Below the pieces are notes generated by a model. That model was not told the DNA's origin and ran no database searches. It was given only the letters and a program-made list of their open reading frames with translations. Shown piece after piece: positions 2,255 through 63,835 of a stretch of DNA of 64,000 bases. The DNA is taken from positions 126,480,001 through 126,544,000 of the forward strand of contig CM097885.1 in NCBI GenBank assembly GCA_044892525.1. The letters are read 5' to 3'. This DNA comes from Schmidtea polychroa. Taxonomy: Eukaryota. Each line of letters opens with the position of its first letter. The first letter of the stretch is position 1. The translations under genes and the position numbers were made by a program.

Positions 2255-2599
2255 TTTCTAAAATTCTTTTCTGATAAATCATATTGTTTTAGATACTTAA
2301 TTAAACATAGTTACGATAATTATTTTATTTTTCATGAATTTGATTGGATAAAAATTATTTATAAAGAATTTAATTAATTAGCAATTTTAAATTTTAATTG
2401 ATATTTTTAAAAAATTAAATGTATATATTCTATGATATATAAATGTATATATTCAATAAAATATTCAATATTGATATTTTTATTTAAAATATTTTAAAAT
2501 AAAACTGTAATTTTTAATCAATTGAAATGTCAACAATATAATTATAAGTATATATTTAAGAATTAAATATTAACTTTAAATAAATAGTTAAACATGGCA

Positions 2600-10600: not shown

Positions 10601-11305
10601 GACAATAACAATGAAGGCTCACTCATGAGGGAAGAGCTAAGACTGAATTTGGGAAGAAGATAGGGCACGAATAAGCGATCTGACAATAATTGGGTCAACG
10701 AATAAAATAATACTAATAATATTATAATAATTTTAGCATCTAATAAATTTTCCTTTTTTTCCTAGGCGCTAGTGTGATCAGAACCTTCGACTTCACTACA
10801 GGGCTATGGCAGCACACATCTAATGCACAGTGCCAATGTTGCTTGCGACGGGTAATTAGTGATAATAAAACATTATGTGTTGGGTTAGGGTTGGCAAAAA
10901 TTGTTGATTATATAGAAAGTTTTGAACATAAATTTCTTTTCACATCCAATTTTTTTGTACTATTTATATATATGTTGGGCTGAGTCGGAAAATCAATTTG
11001 GGAAATTAGGAAAATAAAATAAGCAAGAGGCTAAAGAAAAACAAAATAAAATAAACAAATTACGAATAAAATAGAATAAGATATAAGAAAAACAATAATT
11101 AGGAAATAAGAATTAAAACAAAAATAAAAATAGAAAATTAAAATAGGACAATAGAAGAACGGATAAAATAACGTAAAATTCAATAAATAATAAGGAAATT
11201 AAAGAAATAAATAGAAAATATAATAAAAATAAAGAAAATAGGAAGAAATAACCAAAAACAAGAAAAATAAATTAAAGCAACAAAATTAAGCGGTACTCAA
11301 TTCTG

Positions 11306-11339
11306 ATTGGTCCGCACACACAGAAAATTAATATATAAA
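11306..11339 (+). promoter_or_regulatory. Candidate Pol II promoter (reverse CCAAT plus TATA) upstream of element A
   Basis: ATTGG at 11306-11310 and TATATAAA at 11332-11339, upstream of a GTAAGC donor-like site at 11568. Motif match only. Confidence 0.3.
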
Positions 11340-11361
11340 CACGCACAAAAATCATAAAATT

Positions 11362-11430
11362 ACTGTTAATCTAAACATTCTACAGGTAAGAGTACTTCTA
11401 AATAAGACTGTTAATCTAAACATTCTACAG
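11362..11430 (+). repeat. 24-nt perfect direct repeat enclosing a 45-nt GT..AG segment
   Basis: ACTGTTAATCTAAACATTCTACAG at 11362-11385 and 11407-11430; 11386-11430 begins GTAAG and ends CAG. Confidence 0.85.
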
Positions 11431-11778
11431 ACCTACAATAACCGACAAGGATAATCAACAATCAAAATCATTTTCTAGGAGCATTCAGAGATCGAAATCG
11501 AGACAACTAATTACCGAGAAAGTACCGAATCTATTTCCGACTCAGCCGACAACACTACAAGCATTACGTAAGCAGATTTTTGTTTGAAAGTAATAGTAAT
11601 CATGAGATGTTCGTAAAAGTAAAATTAAATGAATTATGATTTTTCTTTTCGGTTGATCCCTATAAATATTTTTCTATGATTTTAATGATTAAATAAATGT
11701 TTTAATGATAAATGCGTTGTTTTAGATATATTTATGAATTAGTCGGAAAGTCTATAATTTTATGATTGTGCATTTTAT

Positions 11779-11915
11779 GAGAAACGTGGAGTTGAGACGT
11801 TTCATGTCATGGTGTGAGGGGCCTTCGGGAGCTCAGCGGCGGACATGAAACGTTTCAATCACGCAGCTGACTTGGGCCGAAAAGTGGGGCTTCCTCACGG
11901 GTCCGTCGCTGAAGG
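11779..11915 (+). ncRNA. Conserved structured RNA module (5' module of element A), family unknown
   Basis: 17-bp helix 11792-11808/11842-11858, inner CC(UUCG)GG hairpin, and a 30-nt block 11886-11915 identical in copy B; copy B shows compensatory changes in the long helix. Confidence 0.7.
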
Positions 11916-13292
11916 TTCCTAACTTAGTTGAAACAGTGGACCATAGTTATGTGAGAGATTTCAATTAGAAAATTTAGCTACGTTCATGATTCACAGTGAT
12001 TGAGGCGGCCACCACCAATTTTTCGTATCTGGAAAACTGTTATCCACCATAAGTCTGATTTTTAGCGCTAGTTCAGGCGACCGTAATCTAGAAATTCAAG
12101 TTCTTCAACCCTCATCACATCTTGAGATTCAACCATCTACTCGATTTTTCCGAAAGAATCATCTTAATTCGAGCATTTTACTCCAATACCTGATAATTAG
12201 CTGATAGGGTAGTATGAACAATTCATAAGAAAAAATCAAAACACAAAACTTCCAATGTAACAACACTTTATTTTTGAAAACGCTAGTTAACCAAAATATA
12301 TTTACTTACCAAATATGACCGAAAATTAGCCGTCGGAGCAAGATTCATGGTCGTCTTTTAGATAAGTAGTCCGATTCCCTGTCGTAGAATATATCCAACC
12401 TTAGAGAAAGCCCCGCAGTCATAAATCCAAATTCTGCAGGCGAAAGCGAGTAAACGGAGATGAACTGACAAACACATAATGTTTCAGATATTGTCACCCG
12501 GTAGAATCTCATCCAACTACCCATGTGTGAATGCGAAATACAATTGATATCGACAGTAGACACAGATAAGCATCCATGAGAATAGCACAGGACTACCAGC
12601 TTATCATGATCAGCGAGAGTATTTGTTGTAATATGTGTGCGACATGAATTATTAGATAGACAGCAGCCGGTGAGTGGAATCGATAACTATCACCGTGCAG
12701 TACACCGAACCGACCAATAAATCACTGACTTTTATCATGGTGCGAAAGTGTCTCGTGACACTGATAATGAGTAACAAATTAATCCGCTAGTCGACTTGGG
12801 GGTCAACTTTCTACTGCAAATTATTCTTGTAATGTTCACGTTTTTGACCACAATAATAATAAATAAACTGCCCTGCGTATATTTAGATCCTCGGTACGAA
12901 AGATATTAAATGGGAGAAAGAAATGCCAGTTGGGGAATAATTCGTCTCGACTATGTTAACTATAATAGTCTTGGGTCGAGGTCTAATAATGAATTGAGGG
13001 CTTAAGGGGGAATTCGGTGAGTATTGAATTCATTAATAGTACAATTGCCACCCCGGTCACGGATTTTGCATTTGTCAATACAATCGTGCATAATTATGTA
13101 AATAAAATTATGTAATAAATCTAGCAGTAACGAATTATTTACCTGAGATTGTAAGTTTCTTACTTGTCAGTATGGTCTCTTTATTTTGTTGTAAGTATCA
13201 AATATGAATAAATAATCTGTAGAGTAGAGTGATGTCTTCATAAATGCCGTATATTTGTATATCAATTTTCTTTTCTTTTCTAGCTAATTGTC

Positions 13293-14042
13293 ATGCTACC
13301 GAATAATCGACCAGCATTACGTCCTTGTTTCTCCTGCGCCGATAAAAACTCTATTATCAAGGATCTGCAGGACCAGATCGGTCGATACAAGAAGAAGATC
13401 GACGAGCTGGAAGGCACATGGTTCAGCCCAGTGCAAATGAAGGAGGTTCGAAAGAAATTACATCGCAGTGAGCATTGTCGGGATGCCCTGATTTCTGAGA
13501 GCCGTTCCCAACGGAGCTTGATAAAGGAGCAATCTGAAGCGCTCCACAAAGTATATTTACAAGCAGCAACTACGAGGCAATTAGTCAGTATACCCATTCA
13601 CGAAGCGGACAATGTTTTCCCAATGCATCACGACACCTCGTTTAAGTCGTCACCTCCGGCCAAGAAGTCTTGTCGGGAATGTGTTGAAGCCGACCTCTCC
13701 CCCAGGCATCCAGATATCGTGTTACCCAAAATCAGTAAGGTGCCAATCGCCGGTACCTCTACCTCGGCGGTACCTCCGATTAGTCAGGTGGCACCAAAAC
13801 CCAAGCGACGGCAATTGTCGAGAGCCGATCGCAAGAGAAAACAGCGAGAGCGCGCGGCCGCCAAGCACAACGAACAGCCAGCGGAGAATCCTATTAGTGT
13901 TCAGCACCTTCCGACGACAATTGATCTGACCATTGGGGTCCCAGGGCGAATTATCTCCGCCGCTGGAGTGACCTGGGAGGAAAATGCCTCCGAATTCTTT
14001 GATTTGGAAGAGTTGTTGGCCGACACTGAGTGGGAAAAATGA
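13293..14042 (+). CDS. 249-aa protein of unknown family (CxxC, coiled coil, CxxC, basic NLS-like, acidic-aromatic C terminus)
   Basis: Open 249 codons; ~85% aa identity to the 62150 (-) ORF over residues 11-95, with many synonymous differences; Y-tract-TAG acceptor 9 nt before the ATG; AATAAA at 14164. Confidence 0.85.
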   Translation: MLPNNRPALRPCFSCADKNSIIKDLQDQIGRYKKKIDELEGTWFSPVQMKEVRKKLHRSEHCRDALISESRSQRSLIKEQSEALHKVYLQAATTRQLVSIPIHEADNVFPMHHDTSFKSSPPAKKSCRECVEADLSPRHPDIVLPKISKVPIAGTSTSAVPPISQVAPKPKRRQLSRADRKRKQRERAAAKHNEQPAENPISVQHLPTTIDLTIGVPGRIISAAGVTWEENASEFFDLEELLADTEWEK

Positions 14043-14323
14043 GAACTCTCTGTCCGTTCAACCCGCTTCGAAAGACGAATATCAATGTTTCTTTTCTTAT
14101 TTTCTCATCATTCATGTATAACTGTGCGTTGTAAATTATCTACGTTTTATCCCATTGTGAGGAAATAAATCATGTTTGTTACTAATGTTCTTATTAATTT
14201 TGTAAAGTTTATGACTTAGATTTTAGTCATTCTAATCAATATCAGTAGAAATCTTTACAGGATCTATAAGTATCTTCTAAGTCCTGGTTGTTAGTTTGAA
14301 CGAACGGTCTGATGATATGAGTA

Positions 14324-14590
14324 GACGTAAGTCCTTCTATCGGCAGTCAAGGGAAGGAAGTCGAGGCCTCAGTGAGGAGTAGTCCGAAGGTAGGGGCTCA
14401 CCTGCTTACTGGCGTTTCGCTGACATAGTACATTACCAACGTGAAGCGATTCACGGGTACTATGCTGGAATATAAGTTGTGCGGGGTACCGCTCGGAGTT
14501 ACCAAGGGAATGGATAAAACAGACAAAGTAGACCATCATCTCCTAGGCGAAAAGTCAAATGGTAGAGGTGAGTCCGAGTAGTGCCCCAGC
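14324..14590 (+). ncRNA. Conserved structured RNA module (3' module of element A), family unknown
   Basis: GAC(GUAA)GUC and GUGAA(GCGA)UUCAC GNRA hairpins; CAUAGUAC/GUACUAUG helix is CGUAGCAC/GUGCUAUG in copy B; the first 26 nt are identical in both copies. Confidence 0.65.
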
Positions 14591-15318
14591 ATATACTACC
14601 CAACAATACCAATGGTAATTAGTTACATGTATCATCATGATAAATTTAGATGTGAGTTTTTGTTGTAATTATCAAAATAATGTCATAATTAGAAATTTTA
14701 AACTACCCACTACCAGTACACCACACAAATTGTCCAATTAACTTACATAGTGCCGTTTCATATACATATGAAATAGCGACGAGATACACACTAACCATAT
14801 TAATTGGTGCAAAACCTATGTGAGAACATTTAGCTTCGTTGTAGATTCCACTCGCGTCCATTTTCAACTTCATTCGTGTAAAATACAGTGTAATAGAATA
14901 TATTTTCGTAGAAATTGAATTTCATTTTTTTTCACCAATTCATTTTACCCAGTCAAGTCAAGTAACTAGATAATGGCTTTGGAAATCGTAATGCAAGAAA
15001 AATTATATTTTGAAATATTTTTGATTTAAACTTAAGCCTATAAATAAAAGTATAAAAAGACAGAAATGGAATTAATTTTTAAATGGTAAAATAAAATATA
15101 TAATGAAATAAAACTTACATATTTGATATTTATTAGGAATTCTTATAAATTTATTTTCATGAGTATTTTGAATAAAAAAATTAATTGTTTTGTTTTGATA
15201 TGTTAACATAAATTTTTTAAAGTTTTAATTTTTATATTAAATAACAAATGGCGATTTATTAATATATATTTATTGTAGTCTTTAATTAATTTTATTGTGA
15301 TAAATATTTAGATATTTC

Positions 15319-18300
15319 ATGCCCTGCAAAAGAAGCCGTAGAAGTTCCAGCGTAAGTGATGAAAGTGTATCTATCACAGATTATAATGAAGATTCAATAC
15401 AGTCTGCTTCAAGTAGTATTTCTACAAGGAAAAGGCGCAAGACTATTGATTCTCGTTTAGAAGTAATTTTGAGAAAATTATTTAAATCAAATTAATTTTT
15501 AATTAAAATTAACTCTAAAATAGATTGGCCACTGTCAAGAAATTTTAGATAAATTGAGGAATGCCAAGGCTGAAGATGGTCACTTGATAGCTGATTCATT
15601 TATTAGATTACCGAACAAACGAACAGCATCTGATTATTATGAGATCATCGATACGCCAATTGACATTATCAAAATTCAGTCTCGCATTAAAAACGATGAA
15701 TATGAAAATTTCTTTGATTTTCAGATAGACATTGAACAATTAGTTGAAAATGCTAAAACATATCATTCACCTTCATCACTTGAATATCAAGATTCGATTC
15801 TATTGTGGAATGCATTTGAACAAGAAAAACGAAATATTTCCATAAAAGCTGATGTAAAGGCAGAAAGCAGTAATGATATTATTTCAAAGTAAGTTGAGAA
15901 CATTAATTAATTACTTAGGCGCTGAAGGTCGACCTAGACGTAGTAGAAAACGAATAGCTATATCTATTGATGATGGAATGAGTGATCAAATTTCTCTTAC
16001 AACTTCTGAAGATTCTAGAAATACGTCAGAAATTAGTAGCAACTTTTCCGAAAATCCACTTGAAGCTTATTTTACTTCCATCGTTACTCAAAAAACCGAA
16101 GATGGTAGAGATGTGGTTGGAGCTTTCACTTTTATACCATCAAAGACTGTGAGATTTGCTAATTAAATTAAATTACTTTCATAATAATGTTAAAAAACAG
16201 TTATAGTTATTGAAATTGCATTATTTACTTAAGTTTTTATTCTTATTTTTCCTTGTCATTATAAGAATAATCATTAAAAATTTATTTGTCCATTGATTTA
16301 AATTCTTTTTTTTTCAATGAAAATGGATCAAGAAATTACAATAAATAAATTAATTATTATCATAAAAGTAAGATGGATAAATTTTGGTCAGTAGATTAAA
16401 TATAAATGAAGGTTTATGAAAATTTAATTTTTTAATAATATCAGTGGCTAATTAGTATAATGAATATTTGCATTATTCCTCACACCAAGTTCTGTACCAA
16501 ATAATATTGAATAAATTAATTTATTTATATGAACACCTAGGTTAAGTTAATGAGAAAAAACATGAGAAAAAGTACTGAATTTTAAAAGCCTATAAAAGAT
16601 GAGTTTCTTGAAGCCTGGACAACTTCAATGTTTCAAGAAGGGACTTTTCCTTTTCATATGTCAATAGATTGTTAAAATTAAATCAATTTAAGGTGTTGTC
16701 AGTTAATTAACCCGATTGAAATTTTATAATGAGAAATTATGGTATTACATATGACAAATAATAGCCCGGATTATTTTTATTCATTTTTCGTAACAGGAAC
16801 TGTAAACATAAAACAATTTCATGTCTCATGACAAATTCCATCAAATACCCATTACTGTGGTAAATCTCGACTGACTTGATTCCGTTTCCTTTGCTATTCC
16901 TCAGACACATGTTAAAAATGTTAAAAATTGTCGCGTTATATTCGGGCTAATGCGGTAAATGTAATGATATATTATTGTCTGAAAATGAAGAGAAAGAAAA
17001 TTGAATAATTATATTTTCGCAGTAGTTACTTTTGAAACTTTTAATTTATATAATAATTTTATTAATTTAAAAAATTTGTTGTTTGCTAAATTCAATGTAT
17101 TAAATCAATGATGAGCAACATGTGGCGTAATAAGAAAATATATACAAAAAATAAACTGTTAAATAGTAACATTAGTTGTCAATCTATATATTTATAATAG
17201 ATATGTACAAGTATTTTTGTATTTTTGAAAACGATGTGACTCTGCATTCTTTTTTAAACTGTGGGTTTCCAGAGAACCGTAAATATTAAAACTATGAGTT
17301 AACATGCGCCGACCCACCGAGCTTGATGCGTTAAACAATGAGAGAAATTGAAACACTTATCTCTGTACCTCTTATGGCCATTGAGCAAAACAATCTTTAA
17401 ACCAAGAGAAACATATATGATGTCTAGTTGGTTCTACGTCTACTCTAATTACATTGCATCACCCGATATTCTGAATTAAATCAATACACCTGTTTGCAAT
17501 GAATAAAAGCATCTATTTAGTAACAAAGTAGGTATAATATTATTAAGAGAATGTATATGCGGCTCGAACGAAACAAACCAATTAAATTTCCAAAAAATAT
17601 TTTTTGTAGTTTTTGTCTTTTTAAAATTATGTATAAAATTATATACCAGGCGTATCCACAGTATCAAGAAGTTATAAAGGAACCAATCGATCTTAGAACA
17701 ATAGCAAAACGTATTAAATCAGGCGTTTATTTGAGTATTGACGATATCGAAAGCGATTTACAGTTAATGATAAAAAATGCGAAAATATTCAATGAACCCA
17801 AATCGGAAGTATTTCAAGTAAAAAATTTTTAAACCAAAATGTCAATTTGTACTCAATTGGATTTATGAAATTAGAATGCAGTGGAATTGCAGAAAATATT
17901 GAAAATGAAACGAACCGAAATGGAAACCGGGGTGAAAACTCAGAAAGCAAAACGGTACTAGTGTTAATTCACTAATTTGAAATATGAAAGTAAACTTATC
18001 TAGAGGACGTAAACGGAAGACTCCACTTAATTTGACGGAGAAATATGCAAATATGGAGTCACCAAAAGATAGCGATGAATTTGACAGCGAAGAACCAGAG
18101 GATAGTTTGGAAAATAGTGTTGATTATGACGAAGAGTTGAATATTCCTCCGGCTGATAGTCGATTTCCACAATGGCAGTTGTATAAAACCATTACCGGTA
18201 TTACTCTGAGTAACGGGAACAGCCTATGTGCTCCGTTTATGAAACTGCCATCTAAAAAGTATTTTAATTGGTTAATACAATATGTGATAAAATGAACTAG

Positions 18301-24300: not shown

Positions 24301-27300
24301 TCCAATAACTTGAGATTGAGCCATGATTGAATTGGAAACATTGGATAATTGTTCAACGCTTTGGCTAGTAAAAATTTGAATTGTGTTGATCTTTTTAAGA
24401 GCTCGATTAAATAGAATATCATATTCATAAGTTAGCAAGTTTATCTTTTTATCGCTAATGTCATAAATGGTTTCAGATAATTTAATTCAGGTAAGTTCCT
24501 CTTTTGTCATTTCATGATTTACAGCAATTAAATCGTTGATTTGCAATCGTTTTGATAAACTTTGAAAAATTGAATTAATGTCAATTAGAAATTTTCCATT
24601 AATAATTTGCAACGATCTTGTTGAGTCACGCAGATACAAAACACATGTCTACTTTCAAATATTACCTTCGATATATTGCTCATTGAAATACGACATCAAA
24701 CATTCATTATCTTCCATATTTCACTAAAGCCGAAAATTCAAAAATTTACATAAAAGATATCTTTTAAACAAAAATTCCTCGAACCAAACTCGAATTACCA
24801 GAATTAAAATCAATTTTCTAAATCCAAATTAATATCAAAATCTACAATAAAAAAAATAGCAACCTACTTCTCGCGCACACTAACAAGAATCGGTTTAACC
24901 ATACCGCGCGCACAGACGCGATGCCAAAAGCACCAAACAAACTGCCAGTCAGAGGTAAATGCTATTCCCCCTCTNNNNNNNNNNNNNNNNNNNNNNNNNN
25001 NNNNNNNNNNNNNNNNNNNNNNNNNNNNNNNNNNNNNNNNNNNNNNNNNNNNNNNNNNNNNNNNNNNNNNNNNNNNNNNNNNNNNNNNNNNNNNNNNNNN
25101 NNNNNNNNNNNNTGCTTTATCAATGTAGTATTGATTCATTTAGACAGGAATTTATGTTTATATAATATGTTTATAATCATTTTCTCCTGCATCTTTATTC
25201 ACTTTCTGAATTAAATTCAAAAATCTCCGTAAGCCAGTAACTAGAGTTGCAAGTATCTCTAGTAGTTGGCCACCATACACTGTAGGGGAAAGTACCTTTA
25301 AGTTTATATATAATGTAGTTCAATTTCTCCAATTCTTAAATATCCGTCTCTAATTCTTTAAAAGTTGTTCTATTATTTTATTATATAACCATTTTCGTAG
25401 AAATGCTAATATAAAATGGAAATATATTTTTAGAAATTTAAAGACAGTGACATTTATATATGCGAATCCAAATATTCTGTGATCGATAATCGTTTCAAAA
25501 AATTAAAGGTTGGATTAAATCTAGTTGCTGAATCTAAATAAAAAGAGAATTTAGAATTTGACTTACAAGAATAATGCAATAAAAGATCATTTTATTATCC
25601 GTGAAGATCCATTAGTTCTCCAGCGTACATATTCAACAGTTGCTACTGAAACTGTAAAACACGAATCGAATGAATTTATGTTTGTTTTGGAGAATACCAA
25701 AGAAGTCTGCCAATTCAATATATTAAAAAATTAGAAATTAATATTGTAATTAGAGTGTTCTTCAAGAAGATCGATCAGGAACTGAGAGTTGTGTATACTA
25801 TGATCAATATATATGTGACAATGGTTTCAGCGTCAAAGTTGGTGAGTAATTATCATTAACAATAATGCATGAATATCTAACCTCGAATAGGAGATTATGT
25901 TTATGTGAAGGATTCGTCAAGCAAATTACAAATAGTTAGAATTGATCAATTATGGAAGAATGTGTTGTTAGTAAAGAATTTTTACATTATTAAATTTTTA
26001 ATAAATTATTAAATTAAAAAAAAATTTAATTGAAAATTTTTATCCAATAAACGAATAAACGAATGAATAAATAGATTTTTGTTAAGTTGCCTATATATTG
26101 CTACGCGATAAAGACAGTAAATATAAAATTTGACAATCATTTAATTTTAATTGACAATATAACATTTTTTAAATTTCAATATTATCTTAAAATGAATTTT
26201 TTCCTATTGTGTGATAGAAATTATCCCATTTCTAAACTGCTACAGTATAAGTTATAATATATTTAATATTATTATTGATTTATATTGTGTCATAACAGTA
26301 ACTTGATTTGATATCATTTTTTCAAAGGATTCTTATTTATTTGTATATTAAATTTAATTACTTGATTAAGCTTTAACCCTTTCCAGCCCAAATTTTTTCA
26401 AAACAAAAAAAAATATATGCAGTAAGTAGGTACCAAAACTACTTATTTTATCATAAAAATATTTTACTTCATTTTTTTTGTTGCCCCCTTAGAAAAAATC
26501 AGTATGATTCCATTTGGCAACATTGGGCACATAGGTACCATACGTAAGATGGATAGATGGTAAAAATAAAATGCATTTTTCTTTGTTGTTACTAGTTTTT
26601 ATTGTGATATATTTTAAAACAATTTTTTTCTTTTGCAAGACAAAGTGCAACTTTACATTTATCACATTGCGTTCTCGAGTATGATGTTTTACATAATCGG
26701 CAGCGCTGTTTTTGTTCCACATGACTTGGCCAATGTCCTATGCCATCGTACTGAACATCTACAGTAGGAGTTATTGTTGTTACACGTTGTTTTTTTGGTA
26801 TACTGGGAACCGTATCTGAAGGTCTTCCTCGTTTTCGTTCTGTAGACTTGCCAACTAACAACAGGCCATTCGCAATTTCTGCTTGAAATTTTATAAGTGG
26901 CATATGTTTATTGCCATTCTGTTGGCAGTGTCGTCTATACAAAAGCCAAGAATTAACGATACAAATATTTATGAAGTTAAATATTATTCGTAAATATAAC
27001 CTTTTGCCCTTTATATTTATACGCTAGAGTTCTACGAGCATATCGTGAAGATCGACACCTCCCATAAACATATTGTATTCTTTTACAATGGCTGGTCGTT
27101 GGATGTGTACATATTTTTTGGAAGCTAATGACCATCTTTTGATGGTATCAAATGGTAAATGCCCTACATAGTTCGATGCCAAATGAACTGGTTTGTTATC
27201 TAGCCATTTTGTCACAGTAATGTTATTTGTAACGTCTGTTCTGAAGTCAAACGATCCTCTGCCTCGTCGTTTTAGAATGGAGTCCGCTTCTAAATCTATG

Positions 27301-30300
27301 CCAAGCATACGGCATACACGCACTGTACCAGTAGCCAAAAAACTTTTTTCATTCAGTGCAACTAATAATTTATGAGATGTGAATCAGTTGTCCATGAACA
27401 CTTTGAAATTTTTATTTGGTTCTAAATTTTCCAACAAGCGAAGAACAATGTGGCCACTTATACCCAAAGTACTCTCAGTTTTTGCGGTTCCTTTTCCAAC
27501 ATAAATTTCGTAGTCATATATGATACCACTTGCCCCTGCACGGGCAAATACTTTGATGCCCCACTTGTGGGGTTTATTCCTTATATATTGTTTCAGAGAG
27601 TTTTTACCTTTGAAAGGTATCAATATTTCGTCAATTGAATTGAATTCTTCAGGTTCAATCTTACCCATATTATACTTCACCTGGTTTAGAAATGGCCTAA
27701 TTTTAAACAATTTGTCGTGGGCTGGATCGATTCTTGCAAGGGCTTTGTTGTTATCATTGAAGTGTAAAAATGTTCTAAGTTTATCGAATCTATTACGAGG
27801 CATAACACTTGCTATTTTGTCATACCTAGTTTCAGCCATCCAATACATCCGATAACTAGGAACTTTTATTATTCCACTAAGTACCTGAATTCCTATAAAT
27901 TGTTCTATTTCATTCGGACTTGTATTAATTGATGTACCTGATTTTTGTACAGAATATAAATTTGTTTGCTCGGCAATGTTGTGTATAATGTCATTGTCAA
28001 TAAACATTTTAAAATACTGATACACTGATTTATCATCGTGTGGTGGATTTGAAAAATTTAAATTAAAATTTGTATCCACCGTATCGATTTCTTTTTTACG
28101 CCATGAACATGGTCGAACAGAATGTGCAGGTACATTTGGAGTAATATTTTCTAGGTCACTTTCACTTTCTTCTTCCTGGTTCGAAATATCTTCTTCGTCG
28201 GAATCGTTACCACTTGTAGTTGGTCGCTGCTCATCTATCGGCTCAGAGAAATGTTGCTGCAATAAGTCCTCTTCTAGATCATCATCTGACATTTCACTAC
28301 CAGAATCCTGAATCATACGATAAGCTTCTTCAGATGTAAGGGTGTTTAGATTTATCCTTTTATTGAAAGACATCTGAAAAAAAATTATTTCAAACGATAA
28401 ATATAAGAACAGAAGCAAATAGGTGAACCTAAATTAAATCTCAGACAAATTCAGGCATTTAGTGAGTAATATAATCTATAAAAACTTAAAGTTTACCAGA
28501 ATTATAGTTCAACATAAGAAGTAGGCCAAGTGCCCAAAGATTCCAATTGGAATCACAAATTCAATAGGTTATAAAATTATTATAAACATATATTTACCTT
28601 TTGTTCTTGCAATATCACAAACACTAAGCTTTTCTTGAAGTAAATCAATTTTTATTTTAGATAAATAATAACGAAACCACTTATAAAACAACACTTTTTC
28701 TTCGATGTGCGCAACATATAGGTTATGTGAGAGCAGGCTTACAAATGTCGTTACTTTTCTGACAGCTGATACAAATTTAGTGAGATAAAAATTGTGCCAA
28801 CTGTTAAAAACATATCTTACTATAGTTCTCACTAGTTACTGCCAACCGTTTTGGTAGTAGAGAGAAAAAAACTGAGTTTTTAACTAATGATTCCATTTGG
28901 AATCACTGGGCTGGAAAGGGTTAATAAATGTACGTTCATTAAATTTCAATTAGGCATCAACTTAAAGCACGTAGAATAATTAAAATTTGTCGAATAACTA
29001 TTTGAGTGCATGATATTTATTATTATTATTTAGTAATGTTTGATTATTATTTTTATTATTTAATTTGATCATTATTTTTAATAATGTTTTATCACTTTAT
29101 TATTTATTATGCTTATTAATTATTATTTTTAAACAATTAAATGATAATTTAAGCTTTTTGCTGCGAAAAATATATTTAATAAAAATGAAAAATTGCAATG
29201 TTTACTTAAGTTTTTATTCCTTTTTTTTCTCTGTCATTATAAGAATAATCATTCAAAATTTAATTTTTTATCTGTCGATTGATTTAAATTCTTTTTTTTC
29301 CACTGAAAATGGATCAAGAAATTACAATAAATAAATTAATTATTACCATAAAAGTAAGATGGATAAATTTTGGTCAGTAGATTAAATATAAATTAAGGTT
29401 TATGAAAATTTAATTAATTGAATTTAATTTTTTAATAATATCAGTGGCTAATTAGTATAATGAATATTTGCATTATTCCTCACACCAAGTTCTGTACCAA
29501 ATAATATTAAATAAATTAATTTATTTATATGAACACCTAGGTTAAGTTAATGAGAAAAAACATGGGAAAAAGTACTGAATTTTAAAAGCCTATAATAGAT
29601 GAGTTTCTTGAAGCCTGGACAACTTCAATGTTTCCAGAAGGGATATTTCCTTCTCATATGTCAATAGATCGTTAAAATTAAATCAATTTAAGGTGTTTGT
29701 CAGTTAATTAACCCGATTGAAATTTTATAATGAGAAATTATGGTATTACATATGACAAATAATAGCCCGGATTATTTTTATTCATTTTTCGTAACAGGAA
29801 CTGTAAACATAAAACAATTTCATGTCTCATGACAAATTCCATCAAATACCCATTACTGTGGTAAATCTCGACTGACTTTATATTAGTATTTTTTTAATTT
29901 AAAATGATCATTTTTTTAAAATAATGTTTTATTACTATTTATAATCTATTATTTATTATTATTATTATTATTTCTTGGTAGCATCATAAATTAATAGTTC
30001 AACAAGTAAATGATAAAATAATATTTTCAGTATATTATTTTATTCTTTATTTTATTCGTTGACTCAAATTAAATTGACTTATCACGATTACTTATTTTAC
30101 ATTTTTAAGAACTGGTTGAAATTGCAAATAATATTAGATAAAAATAACATATTAAATATTTGGCAATGAAATCTCAATCATAGTAAATGTATAAGATTTT
30201 AATAAAAATGATCACCTTGATATAAAAAATGTTTATACACTTAGTAGACAATGCATAAATTTGTTGAAACCGATTTGTGAAAGTATTGAAATTTTACTAA

Positions 30301-34512: not shown

Positions 34513-36499
34513 AACATACTTTTTTAATTTATTATTTGTACTTTTAATATAAATATATGTGCACTTTTGTATTGATATTTATTTAATATTTTAATAAAAT
34601 ATATCAATTTGTACTTTTATTTGTATTCGCGTTTTGTTGTATAATTTATTTGCTTGTTATTTTAGTAATATATTTAAATATCTTCATAATGTAATGAGAA
34701 TGTTATTGTTAACCGATTAAATGGAATTAGTGAACAACACTTTAATTATTCACATTATACAACGGTTTAGAAATTATTTCTAATAATATAAAATTAGAAG
34801 AATAAAAATTTTTAATGCTTATATGACGCTATTTTTATTTAAATTAAAAAGCCAATATTAATATTTGTATGTATGATATACGGAACCAGTATATCAAATC
34901 GAATCAACACCAATGAAACCGCCTAAAGATACATAAATTTGGCTGGAGAAGGCAAGATTCTAACAATATTGAAAAACAAGACACTAATAACGAGTCGCAG
35001 ATTGGCAAAGAATGTCAAAGTAGAATGTGCCTTCGGCATAAAAGCTAGTCTAAAAAAGACATCCTTCAAAGAAATCAAGACAAACTAATTCGCCAAAATC
35101 TGAGATCATATAGAGAATAATTGGGATTTGTTAATCAAGCAAAAGCCAACAGAAATAAAAGAGTGTATGAGCAATCTCCAAGATAATGCGATTTGGTAAC
35201 TAAAACCATCAGATTAATTAGACGATACGGGAGATTGATGATGAAAGGGCAGATCTCAAAATCACTATACGATTACCTAGTAAGGAACAAGAAATCCTGA
35301 CAAATAAATGAACTAATAACAATGATAAACGAGACAATAATAGAAGAAGCCCGAGCAAATAGCAAAGATGAAATAATAGATCTGGTCATGATATATAATA
35401 AACATATCTTACAATTGGATAACGACACCTTAAGCGAATTAGGTATATGGGATGATGAACAAACGATAAAAATCATGCTGATGGATGAGCCATTGACCAA
35501 AAAATACTCTTAACATAAAGATGTTTGATATATTGTGGTTTATTAGTGGTTGATTTCCCGACTGGATCTTGTACATCAGAAATGGAAAATGGAATGGATA
35601 TAAAGATCAAATAACTAATATTGCAGGATGACAATAAATTTGAAAAATTTGAGATGAATAGAAACAAATGTAAACAGAAATCAAATCTAGTAGCAAGCTG
35701 TAGAAAATGAAGCGTCAAGGAGAAATCACCGGAGCAGATAAGGAGGAAAGCAGTAAGAATCATTACAGTATTAAAACAAAATATTATTATAATTTATTAA
35801 TATTCTTACAAATATTTTCTAAATGATAGTGATAAAGTTTACATTTTATTCTCTGAGTTTTTCAGATCTATGGAATTTATGCTCGTTGGATGGTTATTTT
35901 ATTTTTTATGTGTAATTTTTATGAGTTCCTACAACTAATCTCGCGAGATGTGGCTTTGGTTTCCGGTTTTTTTATTATTTATTGGTTTCTTTATGATCTT
36001 TTTGAAAATATGGCGTCCTAACAGTATAGTTAGCAAATATCCTGTCTAGGGAAGTTCGACTTTAGAATTTCACTCTCAGTAAATGATCACATTTTTTTAC
36101 GAATATACTCACAACGAGAACTATCCCACATACACACTAACAATTACTACAAAAAATTTTCGAAACGAAAAAAAGAGTAGATCCTTGCTCAAATTTATGA
36201 AATTGACGGTAATTAACATCAATTAAGGAGGACCATAATTAAGAATGAACAAATAGCGAAAAAATGAATGCGTAATAATAAATCAACGTAAGACCTTCTA
36301 CAGGCAGCTATGAACCCGAAAATGAGAGTGCAATAAGCAGTTATATCAGTGGAGCTCATCTGCTCATTGATTTTCAACCTCTGTGTATATTACCACCATA
36401 GTTTCTGCCATGGATACACGGATGCCAAAAGTAAAATAGTCATGAAGGCGTTTAACGAATAATCGACGATAAATCTAACAGTTACCCTAGAGAAGTAAA

Positions 36500-37650
36500 A
36501 TAACAAATTCCTTAAGAGCCAAAAATACCTAAAACCCAGGAGAATAATAGAAATCCACCAACACTGGCTAAAAGATCACGAACTAAAAGATGTAATGAAA
36601 AAACTAGACACCAGAAAATGCGAACGAACACCATGGGAAAGAATCGGGAACGAAGTAAATAAGAAATTGGAGATGAAAGACGGAATGTTCGAAAAGAATG
36701 ACATTGAAGAAACAGACGAGATAGTGATAGAAATTCAAGACGATCTGTCACCCTATGAAACCGAGGATGCAAAATCAATGTCAGTTGAAGATGAGGATGA
36801 TAAAATGGAAATACAACAAATCTGTGCGTTACAAAGACATGAATTATGTCCTGCAGAAATGGAAAGGAAGAAATAGCAAAAACTTTCAGAAGCCACAGAA
36901 AATAGAAAATGTTAAGAATTCGGTGAGATCTTAAGATCAAGCTCAAGAAATCAATGATGATTAGCAATGGACATCGTAAGGCAAAAATATCAACAACTTG
37001 AGAGTATTATTCAAAGAGATTGAAGAATATCGACGGAAAGTAATTTAGAATCCAAAGAAAATTGATCAAGTAATTTAAAAATGGAAAAATCGAGAATGGG
37101 CACAAATTAGTCCGGGGAAAATATAAAATCAAAGTCGAATGTCCGGATCAAACAATCGAAGAGTTGGATGTACACCCAACAGCGAAAACAATAGAATTAA
37201 GAAGTTTTATTTCATCTACAAATCCATGGTCGATCACTAGATAACTATTTAGATGTTGGAGTTACACTCATGGTATTGAACGAAACCAACACATTAATAA
37301 TAGATGAAACGTTGGGAAGGCCACTTTAAAGAAAAACCAGAAAAAAAGAAGCAGTTAAAGGAAGCCTGAGCATACCAAGCTTAAATAAGGAATCAGAAAA
37401 ATTACCAGAACCAAAAACCAAAATAACTATTCTAGAAGATAGTGAATATGAGAATGAACCAGCATCACTATTTCTAGTCAAACTATCGACCAAGGGTGGA
37501 CAATGGAGAACAGTACAATTATCAACAAGTCAAAATTGAGTTGAAAAGTGGAGTGAACTAGAGCGGATAAACAATACCACAGAAACAGAGACAAGCAATA
37601 CTCTCTCCAATTAATAAAGGGATGACAGAAACGAAAGCAGTCAAGAGTTA
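36500..37650 (+). mobile_element. Decayed gag/protease-like remnant
   Basis: Purine-rich broken ORFs; YLDVGVTLMVL (~37250) resembles a degenerate retropepsin LDTG motif. Confidence 0.3.
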
Positions 37651-38846
37651 GCCTTGTGATCATATTTCTTGGTTCTTGATTTGAGAGGGTCTTAACATTG
37701 ATCTTTGTATGGAATCTGACTTATGCTCTGTGATAATTCCGCGTGTAAACAGACTGATTAAGACTCTTCGAATCTTAAACACTTATATAAAATAAGTGTT
37801 ATTCATTTGGACGTCTCTGTCACTGAAAATTATACATTTTTTCTTATATTTAAATTGACTTGAGATTGTCGATTAAATTAGAAAATTCATTCGTCTAGTG
37901 CCACATGTATCAATTACATTATACACTCAACATCCATCGGTTATAGTACCCTCGTTAGAGTTCGTTGCTATTTCTCAGAATATTACGAAACATAAGATCA
38001 TGTTGAGGATACCTAAATAATAAAATTAAACAGTTATTATTAAAGCGAACAAATTAACAAGGGAAAAACCTGCATAATAAATAGCAAGTTACTCCAGAAT
38101 TCTAAAATGTTGCGAAGAAATTGAAAAATGAATAGGAAATGACAAAAATAAATAAAATTACACAATAAAACTAATTAATTAACAAGTTCAAATTGAAAAG
38201 AGAAAACAAACGACAAAATGAAGATGGAATTACTTTTTCTCGTGAGCTTAATTGAGATAACAAATAAACCACCGGAGAAGTCGGACAAATAAAAATACCG
38301 AATAAGACCGAATAAGTTCAAAATTTTACAAGACACAATTAATTAAATAACCAAAAACAATTATTTTAAAACATTGTTAAAAATAGAAACATAAAATAAT
38401 CATAAAGCTCTTGCAATTTTCTAAATTTATCATCCTCTCGACACACAGAGACCAATAGAGCAAAATACAGACAAGGACTTATTTGTTTTTTAAAGAGGAA
38501 TAAAAATGTCGGTCAAGAATCTATTTTGGGCTTAGCTGTTACAAGAAGTGACTTCACTGAGGTCGTAGTCAATTGTCTCTTCCATAATATTGAACACATA
38601 ATATTTAGATTTCCGGTTTTAACAATATAATTCCAGTAAATTGTTATCATGATTTTACATTTTTTCATGTTTTTTTTATTACTTAAAAAAACAACTTGTT
38701 TAAATATTCGTTAATTGTATAAAAAAAATATTTGAATTGAAGAATTATTTATCTAATTTGTGTATATTACATTTATTTTTGAAAATACAAAATATTTTAA
38801 CTTATTTCATTTTTGATATCTAATAATTTTTATTGAAGAATTTAGA

Positions 38847-60854: not shown

Positions 60855-61114
60855 TACCCGGATGACCCCCTTCATTACCGCTTTCAGTCCAGAGGATGAA
60901 TGCCCCATATCGATTACGCTCGTCTTGATTCTGGTCATTGCCGAGCAGGACCCGTACATAATCTACCCTCCAACATAGCACCCGTGAATCGCTTCACGTT
61001 GGAACTGTGCTACGCCGGCGAGACGCCAGTAGGCAGGTGAGCCATCTCCTTCGGACTACTCCCTACTGAAGCCTCGACTTCCTAACCCTGACTGCCGATA
61101 GAAGGACTTACGTC
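60855..61114 (-). ncRNA. 3' structured RNA module, copy B
   Basis: Reverse complement aligns to 14324-14590 with the hairpins preserved. Confidence 0.65.
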
Positions 61115-61406: not shown

Positions 61407-62150
61407 TCATCTCTCCCACTCCGAGTCGGCGAGTAACTCGTCCAGATTAAAGAACTCGGCGGCGTTTTCCTCCCACATCGCCCCGGCGGCGGAGATAACT
61501 CGCCCGGAGATCCCGGTTGTTGGGACGACCACCGTTAGATCACTATTGTTGCTGACTGGAGCGATGATTGACGATGTACACTACTTGACAGACGCCCGTT
61601 CCCGTTGTTTCCGTTTGCGTTCGGCCCGAGACAGCTGTCGACGCTTAGGCTTTGAGGAGGTGATCGTTTGTATGGTTGATGAGGACGTGAGATTTAGCTG
61701 GACCTTACTGGTTCCGGTGAATACAATCTCTGGGTCTTTAGGAGAGAGCTCGGATTCTACACATCCATGGCAAGACTTCGCGAGTGGAGACGAAAACTTG
61801 ACAGAAGTATCATGGTGCGCTGGGAAGAGATTGCCGGCTTCGTCAATTGGGATCTTCGCTATTTTTCTAGTGGTCGCCGCTTGTATGTATAGTTTATGCA
61901 GTGCTTCCGACTGCTCTTTTATCAGGCTCCTCTGTGCTCGACTTTCGGAAATGAGAGCATCACGACAGTGCTCGCTTCGATACAATTTCTTTTGGGTCTC
62001 CTTCATTTGCGTGGGACTAAACCATGTCCCCTCCAACTCATCGATCTTCCTTTTGTACTTTCCAATTTGCGCTTGTAGATCCCTGATAACTGAATTCTTG
62101 TCCGAGCAAGAAAAGCAAGGTTTAAGAATGTTGTTGGTACTTGAAGACAT
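61407..62150 (-). CDS. Paralog of the 13293 ORF; 189 aa to an in-frame TAG, 247 codons if read through
   Basis: TAG at 61581-61583; the same frame continues to ..SGRVISAAGAMWEENAAEFFNLDELLADSEWER* (TGA 61407-61409), matching the C terminus of copy A. Confidence 0.8.
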
Positions 62151-63695
62151 CTTGAATAGCTATGAAGAGGAAATGCGAATAAAATCAAACTAAGTCAAAT
62201 GTGAGACATCATCATCTAGTCACACTCATACCATACTGATCATAGATTATCATACTGACAAAACGAGTTTATTAGCCTGAAGAGATTTCGTTACCCTACA
62301 GATCTTGTACGCTTGGGGTCATTATTTATACGAGAGTGGATCATTCATGCAAGATTTTACCGAAGGAAAGTAAGGTATTATCCTGGATAAGGGAAATTAC
62401 AGGTTGATGAAATTACAATTTAATCAATTTACCTGAAAACAGTACCTAACATTTAAAGAGAGTTTAAATTAAATTATAGATTTACCCCAAGACAAATAAT
62501 TTGGATGTGTAGATCTTATGCATGGATAGGCGATTTATCTTTAAATTAATTATTCAACATAAATAAGACTCTATCAATTGCTCTGCAATTATTTGTTTGC
62601 GATAAGTAAAAGTTTGTTAATTAATTTGCACTTGTTTAGTTGTGAGAAAATCAAAATGATTAAAACAAAGTTGAATATTTAAATGAATTTAACCACGTGT
62701 ACCCAAAATGTCTGTCTGGCCGCTATCTATCATTTCTGATCGGTGAGAAAATCGGGTGACTGTCAGTAGTATGTTTCAGTGAATTATGTTTCAGCTGACG
62801 CGTCAGGTTGGATTTCCTGTGATTAACAGTCTGTATAATCTACATATTGCGAGTAGCCTCTGTGATTATTCTAAAGCGCATGGCGCATGAAAATTTTCTC
62901 TCACCTACTTCTACTTAGTCATAATCGCTGACTGATGTCTTCATGCTCTATGCCATGCCGGTGTATGCATGCAGGTGTATTTTCCCTTATGACATATTAC
63001 ATCACTGACGAACCATGTATCTACCTCAAATGCTGCTGGTTATCTCTCATGGATATTTTGGAAAAACCGGATTTCTACATCATCAATGTTGGAATTAATT
63101 CACGATCCCTCAAATAGGATTTACTAGCTCGTCTCGTGGTCCTCCATCGCTATCAATGTACGCCTGCTACTGCTGTCAAATTGGAGATTTATTACTTATC
63201 CCAATGCTGGATTTTCCACCCGACGGGATGTGGACATTTTATGGTTTACTGGGTAAACAATTATTCTAATAAATTATGTTTTAGGGAAATACATTTTTAC
63301 TGATTGGAGTTATTCGCTTTTATTTTTAATGATTACTTAAACCTATTTAATTACGTGATTTCATACAATTTCATCTTTGAGAGGACATATAGCCGATGGG
63401 AATAGCGATTTCGCAAAAATCGTTAGTCGAAAATTTCAAGATTAAATTTCTAGCGAATTCGAGAACTATGACAACTATGGCATACATAGCACTACCAAGG
63501 TTGGACGGTTTTTTAACGAAAGACTTGCCTAGATCTACTGGATGATAAAGAAGAATTTTAACTTGATCAGACGCTGTTATAATACGCTAGTGCGACACCC
63601 TCAATCACTGCGCGAACATATCAAAATTTCTCCTATTGATCGATTCATTCTCCTATCCTACTTCCTCGTATGAATTTTCATAGAATTTAGTCACT

Positions 63696-63835
63696 CCTTC
63701 AGCGACGGACCCGTGAGGAAGCCCCCACATTACGGCCCGAATCAGCTGCGTGATTGAAAAGACCCCATGTCCACCGGCTGAGCTCCCGAAGGCACCTCAC
63801 ACCATGACATAGAGTATCTCAACACCACGTTTCTC
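63696..63835 (-). ncRNA. 5' structured RNA module, copy B
   Basis: Reverse complement aligns to 11779-11915; identical 30-nt block; long helix kept by compensatory changes. Confidence 0.7.

What the first reader, a model, noticed from the sequence alone, without database searches (positions are those of the whole stretch)
11779..11915. 5' RNA module with compensatory covariation and a probable pseudoknot or switch
Seen: A forms a 17-bp helix UUGAGACGUUUCAUGUC/GACAUGAAACGUUUCAA, extended by CGUG/CACG. In B the central GUUUC/GAAAC becomes ACUCU/GGGGU (two U-A to C-G changes, one G-C to A-U). The loop holds UGAG..CC(UUCG)GG..CUCA. The invariant 30-mer GGGGCUUCCUCACGGGUCCGUCGCUGAAGG can pair back in two ways: GUCCGUCGCUGA with UCAGCGGCGGAC (12 bp) and CCUCAC with GUGAGG, competing with the inner hairpin. 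The UUCG loop argues for the + strand. Inference: a functional RNA (ribozyme, packaging/replication signal or IRES-like) of unknown class.
Basis: partly seen in the sequence, partly recalled or inferred. Interest (0 to 1): 0.85.

Follow-up and report, generated by a model that had tools for sequence, protein, structure and literature searches.

The report
Structured RNA leader of unknown element
The flagged 137 bases are a real, selectively maintained RNA fold that matches no catalogued RNA family and sits at the head of a small repeated unit (folded RNA, helical arginine-rich protein gene, second folded RNA) that looks compositionally foreign to its AT-rich host genome.

Summary
Copy A (11779-11915, +) and copy B (63835-63696, -) share a long hairpin. 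Its centre differs between the copies, but pairing is kept by paired and wobble changes. No Rfam family matches. No HDV-like or hammerhead architecture is shared by both copies, and the conservation pattern is the reverse of a microRNA precursor.

The module is the first of three conserved blocks in a unit of about 2.9 kb:
- the 5' module;
- a 249-codon ORF 1.4 kb downstream, with amino-acid changes held down while silent sites are saturated, and GC3 of 0.5-0.8 against 0.16-0.32 in host genes;
- a second structured RNA about 285 nt past the stop codon, which also has a third copy without an ORF at 36281-36437.

The ORF has no Pfam, PDB or fold relative. Its only relatives are parts of chimeric predicted proteins fused to eleven different host domains, so the family is dispersed.

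Best reading: a cis-acting structured 5' leader of this unit's transcript, probably able to adopt two alternative folds. The pseudoknot is possible but no better supported than a plain second hairpin. Ribozyme and IRES roles are unsupported or untested. Only two copies could be compared, so the mechanism is inferred.

The parts
11779..11915 (+). 5' RNA module, copy A: hairpin 1 (11785-11863, with an apical C(UUCG)G sub-hairpin) followed by hairpin 2 (11864-11911). The tail 11886-11915 is invariant between copies.
   Evidence: Covariance model R1 scores it 157 bits.
63696..63835 (-). 5' RNA module, copy B. About 88% identical to A over the module. All stem differences keep pairing.
   Evidence: R1 scores it 164 bits.
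11636..11778 (+). AT-rich upstream stretch with blocks shared with copy B (11636-11657, 11689-11708) and a TATAAT at 11753-11758. Candidate promoter. Copy B's equivalent runs to the window edge, so the 5' limit of the unit is unknown.
   Evidence: alignment. (11618-11789 against 63983-63825, 62% identity, E 3e-8 under permissive scoring). The promoter role is inferred.
11994..12005 (+). Conserved 12-mer, the only invariant island in the otherwise unalignable interval (copy B: 63599-63610, -). It pairs 10 bp with 11853-11862, the 3' strand of the basal stem of hairpin 1, and contains a GU that could be a splice donor.
   Evidence: About 2% of shuffled 12-mers or of other 12-mers from the interval pair as well. 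Duplex -18.1 kcal/mol against -16.5 for the basal stem.
11916..13283 (+). Non-conserved interval (36% GC), ending in a pyrimidine tract and a TAG 3'-splice-site-like signal 9 nt before the ORF's ATG. Read here as an intron. Copy B's equivalent is 62160-63695 (-).
   Evidence: No Pfam domain in its ORFs.
13293..14042 (+). ORF of copy A, 249 codons, intact. Predicted helical hairpin (residues 16-98), a disordered middle, an arginine/lysine-rich helix (177-192) and an acidic tail.
61407..62150 (-). ORF of copy B. Broken once, by one in-frame stop. The codons after it stay open and conserved.
14324..14480 (+). 3' RNA module, copy A. It starts with a 5'-splice-site-like GUAAGU and has three supported helices, one capped by a GCGA tetraloop.
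60958..61114 (-). 3' RNA module, copy B (86% identical to A).
36281..36437 (+). Third, diverged copy of the 3' module (40% GC). No ORF or 5' module is nearby. It lies about 770 nt past the stop of ORF 35322-35513, which I take, without any domain match, to be the last exon of the bromodomain/BAH gene.
   Evidence: Model R2 scores it 31 bits, E 5e-8. It aligns from the same first bases as A and B. No ORF relative nearby.

Best explanation
The module is the structured 5' leader of the primary transcript of a small repeated unit.

Proposed sequence of events:
1. The unit is transcribed from the AT-rich region just upstream.
2. The first 137 nt fold into two adjacent hairpins.
3. The leader is joined by splicing to an acceptor 9 nt before the start codon of a 249-residue protein made of a helical hairpin and an arginine-rich helix.

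The stem of hairpin 1 needs only to pair, so it covaries. The apical loop, the 3' strand of the basal stem and the 30-nt tail are frozen in sequence. I read that as each having to satisfy more than one partner:
- The tail can pair either within hairpin 2 or with the loop of hairpin 1.
- The 3' strand of the basal stem can pair either with its own 5' strand or with a conserved 12-mer 80 nt downstream, which contains a donor-like GU.

So the leader most likely acts as a two-state cis element. It would set how much transcript is spliced and translated, and how much is kept unspliced or bound by protein. The unit's own arginine-rich protein is the obvious candidate ligand.

Shown: the fold, the strand, the selection, the unit's anatomy and the acceptor-like signal. 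Inferred: transcription start, the splicing itself, which donor is used, the switching and the protein binding.
For: Fold and strand.

Strong constraint on the RNA
- The two ORFs are saturated at silent sites (pS 0.85) and differ at 18% of replacement sites.
- The interval between module and ORF cannot be aligned.
- The module nevertheless stays 84-88% identical, with a 30-nt invariant run.

Position at the head of the unit
- Conservation starts sharply at 11779, below shared AT-rich blocks and a TATAAT.

Splicing
- Both copies have a pyrimidine tract plus TAG exactly 9 nt before the ATG.
- In relatives, the predicted junctions with foreign exons lie 4-5 codons before the family's first Met. 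The ORF exon therefore takes an upstream exon, and the module region is the only conserved sequence upstream.
- Two invariant donor-like sites exist: AUG|GU at 11811/11812 in the apical loop, whose AUG would be in frame with the ORF in both copies (worked out by hand), and the GU in the 12-mer.

Dual pairing
-. Each partner of the invariant tail changed only by a wobble-preserving transition.

The unit is a dispersed, compositionally foreign family
- GC3 is 0.51-0.78 against 0.16-0.32 in host genes.
- Relatives are fused to eleven different host domains.
Against: - Only two copies exist, so no helix except hairpin 1 has a double compensatory change, and the formal shuffle control is powerless.
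- There is no expression data, so transcription start, splicing and donor choice are all unobserved.
- None of the candidate donors is a strong match to the usual consensus (my recollection of that consensus, not a tool result).
- If the host trans-splices, the acceptor before the ATG would not need the module at all. Three genes here have an AG 3-9 nt before their ATG.
- The 10-bp match of the 12-mer has about a 2% chance expectation, and both partners are invariant, so it is suggestive only.
- A poly(A)-signal-like hexamer about 125 nt past the stop in both copies suggests that the 3' module may lie outside the mRNA, so the 'one RNA with two structured ends' picture is not secure.
Confidence: 0.5

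Rival explanations
1. A stand-alone small non-coding RNA gene of about 137 nt, snRNA-like or spliced-leader-RNA-like, with a 33-nt 5' part ending in AUG followed by GU and a structured remainder. It would have been duplicated together with the neighbouring ORF, or work with its protein as an RNP.
For: - Conservation begins and ends sharply, at 11779 and 11915.
- The size and the layout (short 5' segment, GU, stem-loops) resemble the SL RNAs described in PMC7986045.
- Acceptor-like AGs lie 3-9 nt before the ATG of three genes in the window, and introns are 49-61 nt, as in some trans-splicing animals.
- The 3' module can occur without the ORF, so structured-RNA blocks here can be autonomous.
Against: - There is no Sm-type site inside the conserved module. 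The nearest matches to the motifs quoted in PMC7986045 lie 70-100 nt downstream, at non-homologous places in A and B.
- The 33-nt 5' part differs at 7 positions between the copies, whereas spliced leaders are near-identical multicopy genes.
- Only two copies are found, and both keep the same distance and orientation to the ORF.
- B has a T4 run inside the module, which argues against Pol III.
- No Rfam snRNA or SL family matches.
- It does not resemble the Hydra, Ciona, Schistosoma or C. elegans leaders printed in PMC7986045.
Confidence: 0.2
2. An IRES-like or other translation-control structure. After splicing, the folded leader would sit directly upstream of the start codon and recruit or block ribosomes.
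For: - A leader of -61 kcal/mol with upstream AUGs (11804, 11809) would strongly hinder scanning, so some special mode of initiation or repression is plausible.
- The acceptor lies only 9 nt before the ATG.
Against: - No similarity to any Rfam IRES family.
- If the apical-loop donor is the one used, most of the structure would be intronic and absent from the mRNA.
- Nothing here tests translation.
Confidence: 0.1
3. A self-cleaving ribozyme that trims the 5' end of a retroelement RNA out of a read-through transcript, as HDV-like ribozymes do for R2 and L1Tc.
For: - The position at the 5' side of a repeated unit.
- A possible loop-to-tail pseudoknot.
- Such ribozymes are known at the 5' ends of non-LTR elements (PMC3185411, PMC3774820).
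Against: - No ribozyme family matches in Rfam even at E up to 10.
- My topology scan found no nested double pseudoknot present in both copies (A-only hits used non-conserved flanks; B had none) and no hammerhead core.
- The unit has no reverse transcriptase and no poly(A) or target-duplication signs.
- Sequence similarity continues upstream of the module, which is unexpected if the RNA were cut there.
Confidence: 0.05
4. Not an RNA signal at all: a DNA palindrome kept by replication template switching, or a microRNA precursor hairpin.
For: - Template switching can create matched changes on both arms of an inverted repeat in one event (my recollection of the literature on this mechanism, not a tool result).
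- Rfam gives weak hairpin-shaped matches to two mir families.
Against: - B's new arm sequences are not perfect complements. They pair through G-U, which only helps at the RNA level and on one strand.
- The mir matches score 15-21 bits against thresholds of 50-55.
- The stem varies while the 33-nt loop is invariant, the opposite of microRNA precursors.
- The second hairpin and the 30-nt tail are conserved too.
Confidence: 0.03

Closest known systems
Structured 5' leaders of retroviruses and LTR retroelements (hairpin-rich leader with the major splice donor in a hairpin, alternative conformations, binding by the element's own basic protein)
   Same: - A GC-rich multi-hairpin leader at the head of a repeated unit.
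- A donor-like site inside a hairpin loop.
- An acceptor just before a downstream ORF.
- Mutually exclusive pairings.
- An encoded protein with a multimerising helix and an arginine-rich helix. Some relatives carry a PPPY motif (P0003 and P0004).
   Different: - No LTRs or other terminal repeats.
- No reverse transcriptase, protease or integrase anywhere in the unit.
- A primer-binding site was not tested.
- No sequence or fold similarity of the protein to any Gag.
HDV-like self-cleaving ribozymes at the 5' ends of non-LTR retrotransposons (R2, L1Tc; PMC3774820, PMC3185411)
   Same: The 5' position in a repeated unit, GC-rich compact structure and a possible pseudoknot.
   Different: The defining nested double pseudoknot is not found in both copies, there is no Rfam hit, and the unit has no retrotransposon ORF2.
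Spliced-leader RNAs (PMC7986045)
   Same: A length of about 100-140 nt, a short 5' segment ending in AUG followed by GU, stem-loops downstream, and the donor region held in a stem-loop.
   Different: No Sm site in the conserved part, two diverged copies instead of a homogeneous array, fixed linkage to an ORF, and no match to the published leaders.
Pre-mRNA structures that hide or expose a 5' splice site (general class of splice-site-sequestering hairpins)
   Same: Two invariant donor-like GU sites each lie in a segment that can be either paired or free, depending on which of two helices forms.
   Different: No evidence yet that either site is used. Such elements are usually gene-specific, not part of a dispersed family that also has a second structured RNA at its 3' side.

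Membership tests
Any Rfam 15 family | Score at or above the family's gathering threshold | tested here: not met
   No match in the whole window at gathering thresholds. Nothing at E up to 1 in 11000-15400. At E up to 10 only sub-threshold hairpin-like matches appear.
HDV-like ribozyme | Nested double pseudoknot (P1, P2, P3, P1.1, P4 in the canonical order), conserved between copies | tested here: not met
   My topology scan (descriptor recalled from memory, so a lead rather than a curated test) found hits in A only, all using non-conserved flanks, and none in B. Rfam's HDV-type models give no hit.
Hammerhead ribozyme | Conserved catalytic core flanked by three helices | tested here: not met
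   No core motif in either 5' module on either strand. No Rfam hammerhead hit at E up to 10.
microRNA precursor | Long stem with conserved arms and a free-to-vary loop; score above the family threshold | tested here: not met
   The stem centre varies and the 33-nt loop is invariant. The mir-5697 and mir-196 matches score 20.6 and 15.1 bits against thresholds of 50 and 55.4.
Spliced-leader RNA | Short 5' exon followed directly by a GU donor | tested here: inconclusive
   An invariant AUG|GU lies at 11811/11812 and at the same place in B. Its use is unknown.
Spliced-leader RNA | Sm-binding site between stem-loops, 20-60 nt after the donor (criteria in PMC7986045) | tested here: not met
   No U-run motif inside the conserved module. 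The nearest look-alikes are 70-100 nt past the module's end and not at homologous positions.
Spliced-leader RNA | The leader is found on the 5' ends of many unrelated mRNAs | not testable with these tools
Non-LTR or LTR retrotransposon | Reverse transcriptase ORF; terminal repeats, or a poly(A) tail with target duplication | tested here: not met
   No Pfam domain in the unit's ORFs. No terminal direct or inverted repeats of note. No A-tail after the 3' module.
Delta-agent-like element (small helical, basic antigen plus ribozymes on a rod-like RNA) | Rod-like self-complementarity of the whole unit; antigen-family protein match; HDV-type ribozymes | tested here: not met
   No long-range inverted complementarity across 11500-15300. 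No Pfam match of the ORF to any family at E up to 1 beyond generic coiled-coil noise. No HDV-type fold. The unit is DNA with an intron-like interval.
The unnamed ORF family itself (window ORFs plus P0001-P0013) | Core of about 75 residues with invariant W, P, L, E, R, Q, R, Q positions, followed by an arginine-rich run | tested here: met
   phmmer E from 7e-8 to 9e-4 against nine cluster representatives. The alignment shows the invariant columns. tblastn hits only the two window ORFs.

The most novel reading that the evidence does not exclude
The unit is a member of an undescribed kind of mobile or virus-derived genetic element. It would have a structured 5' RNA, a single small protein (multimerising helical hairpin, arginine-rich RNA-binding helix, and a PPPY budding-type motif in some relatives) and a separate structured 3' RNA. 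It has no polymerase or transposase of its own. It would spread as an RNA-protein particle at the expense of other machinery, landing next to or inside host genes, where its acceptor and donor sites splice it into host transcripts. The 5' module would then be its packaging and expression switch.
Probability: 0.15. Interest if true: 0.85.

Novelty: new variant of a known kind. Interest (0 to 1): 0.6.

Why it matters
Structured RNAs backed by compensatory change and absent from Rfam are uncommon in animal nuclear genomes. Here there are two in one unit, bracketing a protein family that no database names.

If the unit is mobile, it would be a very small element whose only gene looks like a minimal RNA-binding, self-associating protein. 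That bears on how non-autonomous elements get packaged and expressed, and on how they create chimeric host transcripts. All 13 relatives retrieved are predicted proteins: eleven carry a foreign host domain, one has a long N-terminal extension with no domain match, and one is a 94-residue fragment.

If it is instead a host gene family, the leader is a clean candidate for a splice or translation switch with two mutually exclusive helices, testable with existing transcriptome data.

Either way, the covariance models R1 and R2 give a way to find all copies in the source genome and its relatives.

Tried and rejected
Searches for more copies
- Exact-pattern scans of viral contigs with three invariant stretches found nothing.
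- The one metagenome scan returned a single high-GC bacterial contig (L001) that shares 25 bases inside a transporter gene. I read this as chance.
- A protein-pattern scan of viral contigs found none.
- Exact look-ups of the window ORF, of two relatives and of a neighbouring kinase gave nothing on record.
- Kinase homologues used as a route to syntenic loci gave only contigs of 3 kb or less.
- The relatives exist only as UniParc entries without DNA.

What the ORF is
- Pfam, PDB by sequence, an AlphaFold model and Foldseek against viral and PDB libraries gave nothing beyond generic helices.

Hypotheses tested and dropped
- A rod-like delta-agent layout is rejected.
- 5'-3' cyclisation between the two modules: duplex energies are no better than shuffles (A z about -2, B about 0).
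- tRNA-like parts: none.
- Further copies of the 5' module in the window: none.
- Remnants of the ORF near the third 3' module: none.

Literature
- Full-text search for the invariant RNA strings and for the peptide motifs gave no papers.

Host organism: not established.

- While brainstorming I recalled from memory, in my own reasoning, pieces of a human RNase P RNA, a group II intron domain V, a rotifer spliced leader and several short consensus motifs (splice sites, promoter boxes, snRNA ends).
- In the script I did use a 7-nt hammerhead core pattern and an HDV-like helix-order descriptor from memory. Those results are marked as leads, and Rfam's curated models are cited as the proper test.
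- In one search my helix for the 6-bp pairing was one base out of register.

Full report
**What is there**

The window is AT-rich (29% GC). It carries ordinary animal genes:
- a 266-residue protein kinase (1454-2254, -);
- a bromodomain/BAH gene running from 15319 to at least 33400 (+), possibly to about 35500, with a piggyBac-type transposase ORF in one intron;
- a CN-hydrolase gene.

Introns that I could place are 49 and 61 nt long.

The flagged stretch 11779-11915 (58% GC) has one relative in the window, on the other strand at 63835-63696.

**Check of the observation**

In copy A, 11791-11808 pairs with 11842-11859 over 18 contiguous pairs, extended by CGUG/CACG.
- No dinucleotide shuffle out of 2000 reaches 17 pairs.
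- The fold energy of -60.9 kcal/mol has z = -4.6.

In copy B the middle of this helix is different on both strands and still pairs.
- There are two U-A to C-G changes and two changes to G-U.
- There is one G-C to A-U change that needs a one-base shift around an inserted U. Read without that shift, the two pairs there are broken in B.
- In the consensus nested fold all 96 sequence-by-pair cells are standard pairs, against 38-46% when the partners are slid by 1-3 columns.

With two sequences the shuffle control has no power (107 of 500), so the argument is qualitative. Every substitution that falls in a stem keeps the pair.

Six wobble pairs in A and ten in B would be mismatches on the opposite strand, which folds to only -42.6 kcal/mol.

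**The pseudoknot and the switch**

The minimum-energy fold is two plain hairpins: 11785-11863 and 11864-11911.

However, three of its bases belong to hairpin 1, leaving nine free pairs.
- In B the nine free pairs survive, with one C-to-U wobble and a one-base bulge.
- The duplex energy drops from -24.5 to -15.9 kcal/mol. Hairpin 2, with which the pairing competes, is worth -21.1 in A and -24.0 in B and also carries one wobble-preserving change.
- A 12-bp helix appears in 9% of shuffles.

The two alternatives are therefore equally compatible with the data and neither is proven. The tail is completely invariant while each of its two possible partners changed only by a pair-preserving transition. 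That is what a sequence serving two pairings would show, but it is weak evidence.

I found a second candidate of the same kind.
- The only invariant island in the otherwise unalignable 1.4 kb downstream is a 12-mer at 11994-12005 (63610-63599 in B).
- It pairs over 10 bp with 11853-11862, the 3' strand of the base of hairpin 1.
- Its energy is like that of the basal stem itself (-18.1 against -16.5 kcal/mol).
- About 2% of shuffled or neighbouring 12-mers do as well.

**Surroundings**

A self-comparison shows that A and B share three blocks in the same order and spacing:
- the 5' module (84% identity over 163 nt);
- an ORF (13293-14042 in A; 62150-61407 in B; 67% nucleotide and 68% protein identity);
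- a second non-coding block (14324-14469 against 61114-60969, 86% identity).

Weak similarity (62%) runs at least 160 nt upstream of the module, to the window edge in B. It includes two AT-rich blocks and, in A, a TATAAT 21 nt before 11779.

The ORF is intact in A. In B it carries one in-frame stop, and the codons after the stop are still open and conserved.

Between A and B, 85% of silent sites differ (saturated) but only 18% of replacement sites do. The protein is under purifying selection and the copies are old relative to neutral decay. That makes the 84-88% identity of the two non-coding blocks a sign of strong constraint.

The ORFs have GC3 of 0.51-0.78, while nine other ORFs in the window have 0.16-0.32. 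The unalignable interval is only 35-36% GC. The high GC is therefore a property of the conserved blocks, not of the region.

I infer that most of the A-B divergence arose under a different mutational or selective regime from that of the host genes. This fits two lineages of a mobile or foreign element better than an old local duplication, although selection on silent sites is not excluded.

**The protein**

It has no Pfam family, no PDB relative by sequence and no structural relative in the viral or PDB libraries.

The model (mean pLDDT 64, above 90 in the core) is a helical hairpin (residues 16-39 and 46-98), a disordered middle, a basic helix (177-192) and a disordered acidic tail.

A full HMMER scan of 1.84 billion representatives found nine relatives at E from 7e-8 to 9e-4. 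A profile search added four.
- All are UniParc-only entries from one accession range.
- Eleven are chimeric predictions in which the roughly 150-residue core is fused to a different host domain: an SLC6-like transporter (read from the sequence), subtilase, glycine-cleavage P protein, CRAL-TRIO, bL21m, actin, tyrosine phosphatase, MCM, sedlin, aminopeptidase N and LSM14.
- Of the other two, P0007 has a long N-terminal extension with no domain match, and P0009 is a 94-residue fragment.
- The core parts are 17-90% identical to one another and fall into at least three groups.
- Two cores that are 90% identical sit next to different host genes.

The family is thus dispersed through at least one related genome.

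Where a host part is fused upstream, the junction lies 4-5 codons before the family's first Met. In both window copies a pyrimidine tract and TAG lie exactly 9 nt before the ATG. The ORF exon therefore begins with an acceptor.

**The 3' module**

It begins in all copies with a GUAAGU 5'-splice-site look-alike and folds on the same strand into three main helices, one capped by a GCGA loop.

A covariance model built from A and B finds a third, much more diverged copy at 36281-36437 (31 bits, E 5e-8).
- It aligns from the very same first bases.
- No ORF relative or 5' module is near it.

Across the three copies, 12 pairs have changes on both sides, and helices 4, 6 and 7 are 94-98% paired, against 36-44% for slid partners. 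That alignment is fitted to the model, so it leans that way.

This RNA is at least as well supported as the flagged one. It can exist apart from the ORF. All three copies lie a few hundred bases downstream of a stop codon on the same strand. A poly(A)-signal-like hexamer about 125 nt after the stop in A and B leaves open whether the module is part of the mRNA.

**What it is not**

- Rfam: no hit at gathering thresholds in the window, none at E up to 1 in 11000-15400, and only sub-threshold hairpin matches at E up to 10.
- No HDV-like nested pseudoknot or hammerhead core is common to both copies (the descriptors came from memory, so Rfam is the firmer test).
- No tRNA-like element.
- No terminal repeats and no rod-like self-complementarity.
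- No reverse transcriptase or transposase in the unit.
- No specific pairing between the 5' and 3' modules beyond shuffles.
- The microRNA reading fails because the stem varies while the loop is frozen.

**Most likely working**

The only conserved sequence upstream of an ORF exon that starts with an acceptor is the module and the 12-mer. The module starts sharply below promoter-like blocks.

I therefore read it as the leader of the unit's primary transcript, joined by splicing to the ORF. Two invariant donor-like sites are candidates:
- AUG|GU in the apical loop of hairpin 1 (11811/11812). Counting by hand, its AUG would be in frame with the ORF through the 9-nt exon start in both copies.
- The GU inside the 12-mer.

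Each lies in a segment that can be free or paired depending on which of two helices forms. The frozen loop, basal 3' strand and tail would be explained by dual pairing and/or by recognition by a protein, for which the unit's own arginine-rich protein is the natural candidate.

All of this paragraph is inference. I put 0.5 on 'cis-acting leader of this unit's transcript' and less on the two-state detail.

The main rival (0.2) is a free-standing small RNA of about 137 nt, possibly spliced-leader-like. It gains some colour from AGs 3-9 nt before three start codons and from the short introns. It loses from the lack of an Sm site, from the divergence of the putative leader, and from its fixed linkage to the ORF.

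**Limits**

No DNA of any relative could be obtained. All structural inference for the 5' module rests on two copies. The host organism was not identified. No expression data were available.

The details are in the section Tried and rejected; none of those letters was used as evidence.

Noticed in passing
window 14324-14480 (+), 60958-61114 (-), 36281-36437 (+): A second unclassified structured RNA (the '3' module'). It has three copies, 12 pairs with double compensatory changes, a GCGA tetraloop and a sharp common start at a GUAAGU splice-donor look-alike. The third copy has no ORF or 5' module nearby.
   Followed up: partly
window 61407-62150 (-): Copy B's ORF has one in-frame stop, yet the remaining codons stay open and conserved (pN 0.19). 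Either the stop is very recent or it is read through.
   Followed up: partly
L001 200-224 (metagenome contig Ga0137796_10042547): A 25-base exact identity between the invariant tail of the module and the coding sequence of what looks like a solute-binding protein gene in a high-GC bacterial contig. I expected about 0.01-0.02 such matches by chance. There is no similarity beyond the 25 bases, so I treat it as coincidence.
   Followed up: partly
window 13282-13283, 15310-15311, 2258-2259 (-): Three genes (the unit's ORF, the bromodomain gene and the kinase) each have a pyrimidine-rich run and an AG only 3-9 nt before the ATG. Placed introns are 49 and 61 nt. Together these hint at a host that trans-splices or has very short 5' UTR exons. 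The organism was not identified.
   Followed up: partly
window 11724-11748, 15259-15283, 63975-64000 (-): A similar AT-rich motif (ATATTTAT followed by GTAGTC-like bases) lies upstream of both units and just upstream of the bromodomain gene's first coding exon. It could be a shared promoter motif or AT-rich chance.
   Followed up: no
window 16213-16880 and 29190-29881: A 692-nt direct repeat (93% identical) inside the bromodomain/BAH gene. It brackets the region that holds the piggyBac-type transposase ORF (27384-28418, -, Pfam DDE_Tnp_1_7, E 2.5e-45).
   Followed up: no
window 47155-47844: A tandem array with a period of roughly 115-120 nt and 78-83% identity between units (self-BLAST).
   Followed up: no
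window 36440-38000 (+): A purine-rich stretch (AT skew 0.25, GC 34%) directly after the third 3' module, with short lysine/glutamate-rich ORFs and no Pfam match. It may be a decayed coding sequence.
   Followed up: partly
window 24975-25112: A run of 138 N (assembly gap or mask) inside the bromodomain/BAH gene. Left as it is.
   Followed up: no
P0003 and P0004 (relatives of the ORF): Two relatives carry a PPPY motif followed by a conserved acidic/aromatic stretch after the arginine-rich run. PPxY motifs recruit budding machinery in many viral matrix and Gag proteins (my recollection). The window copies lack it.
   Followed up: no
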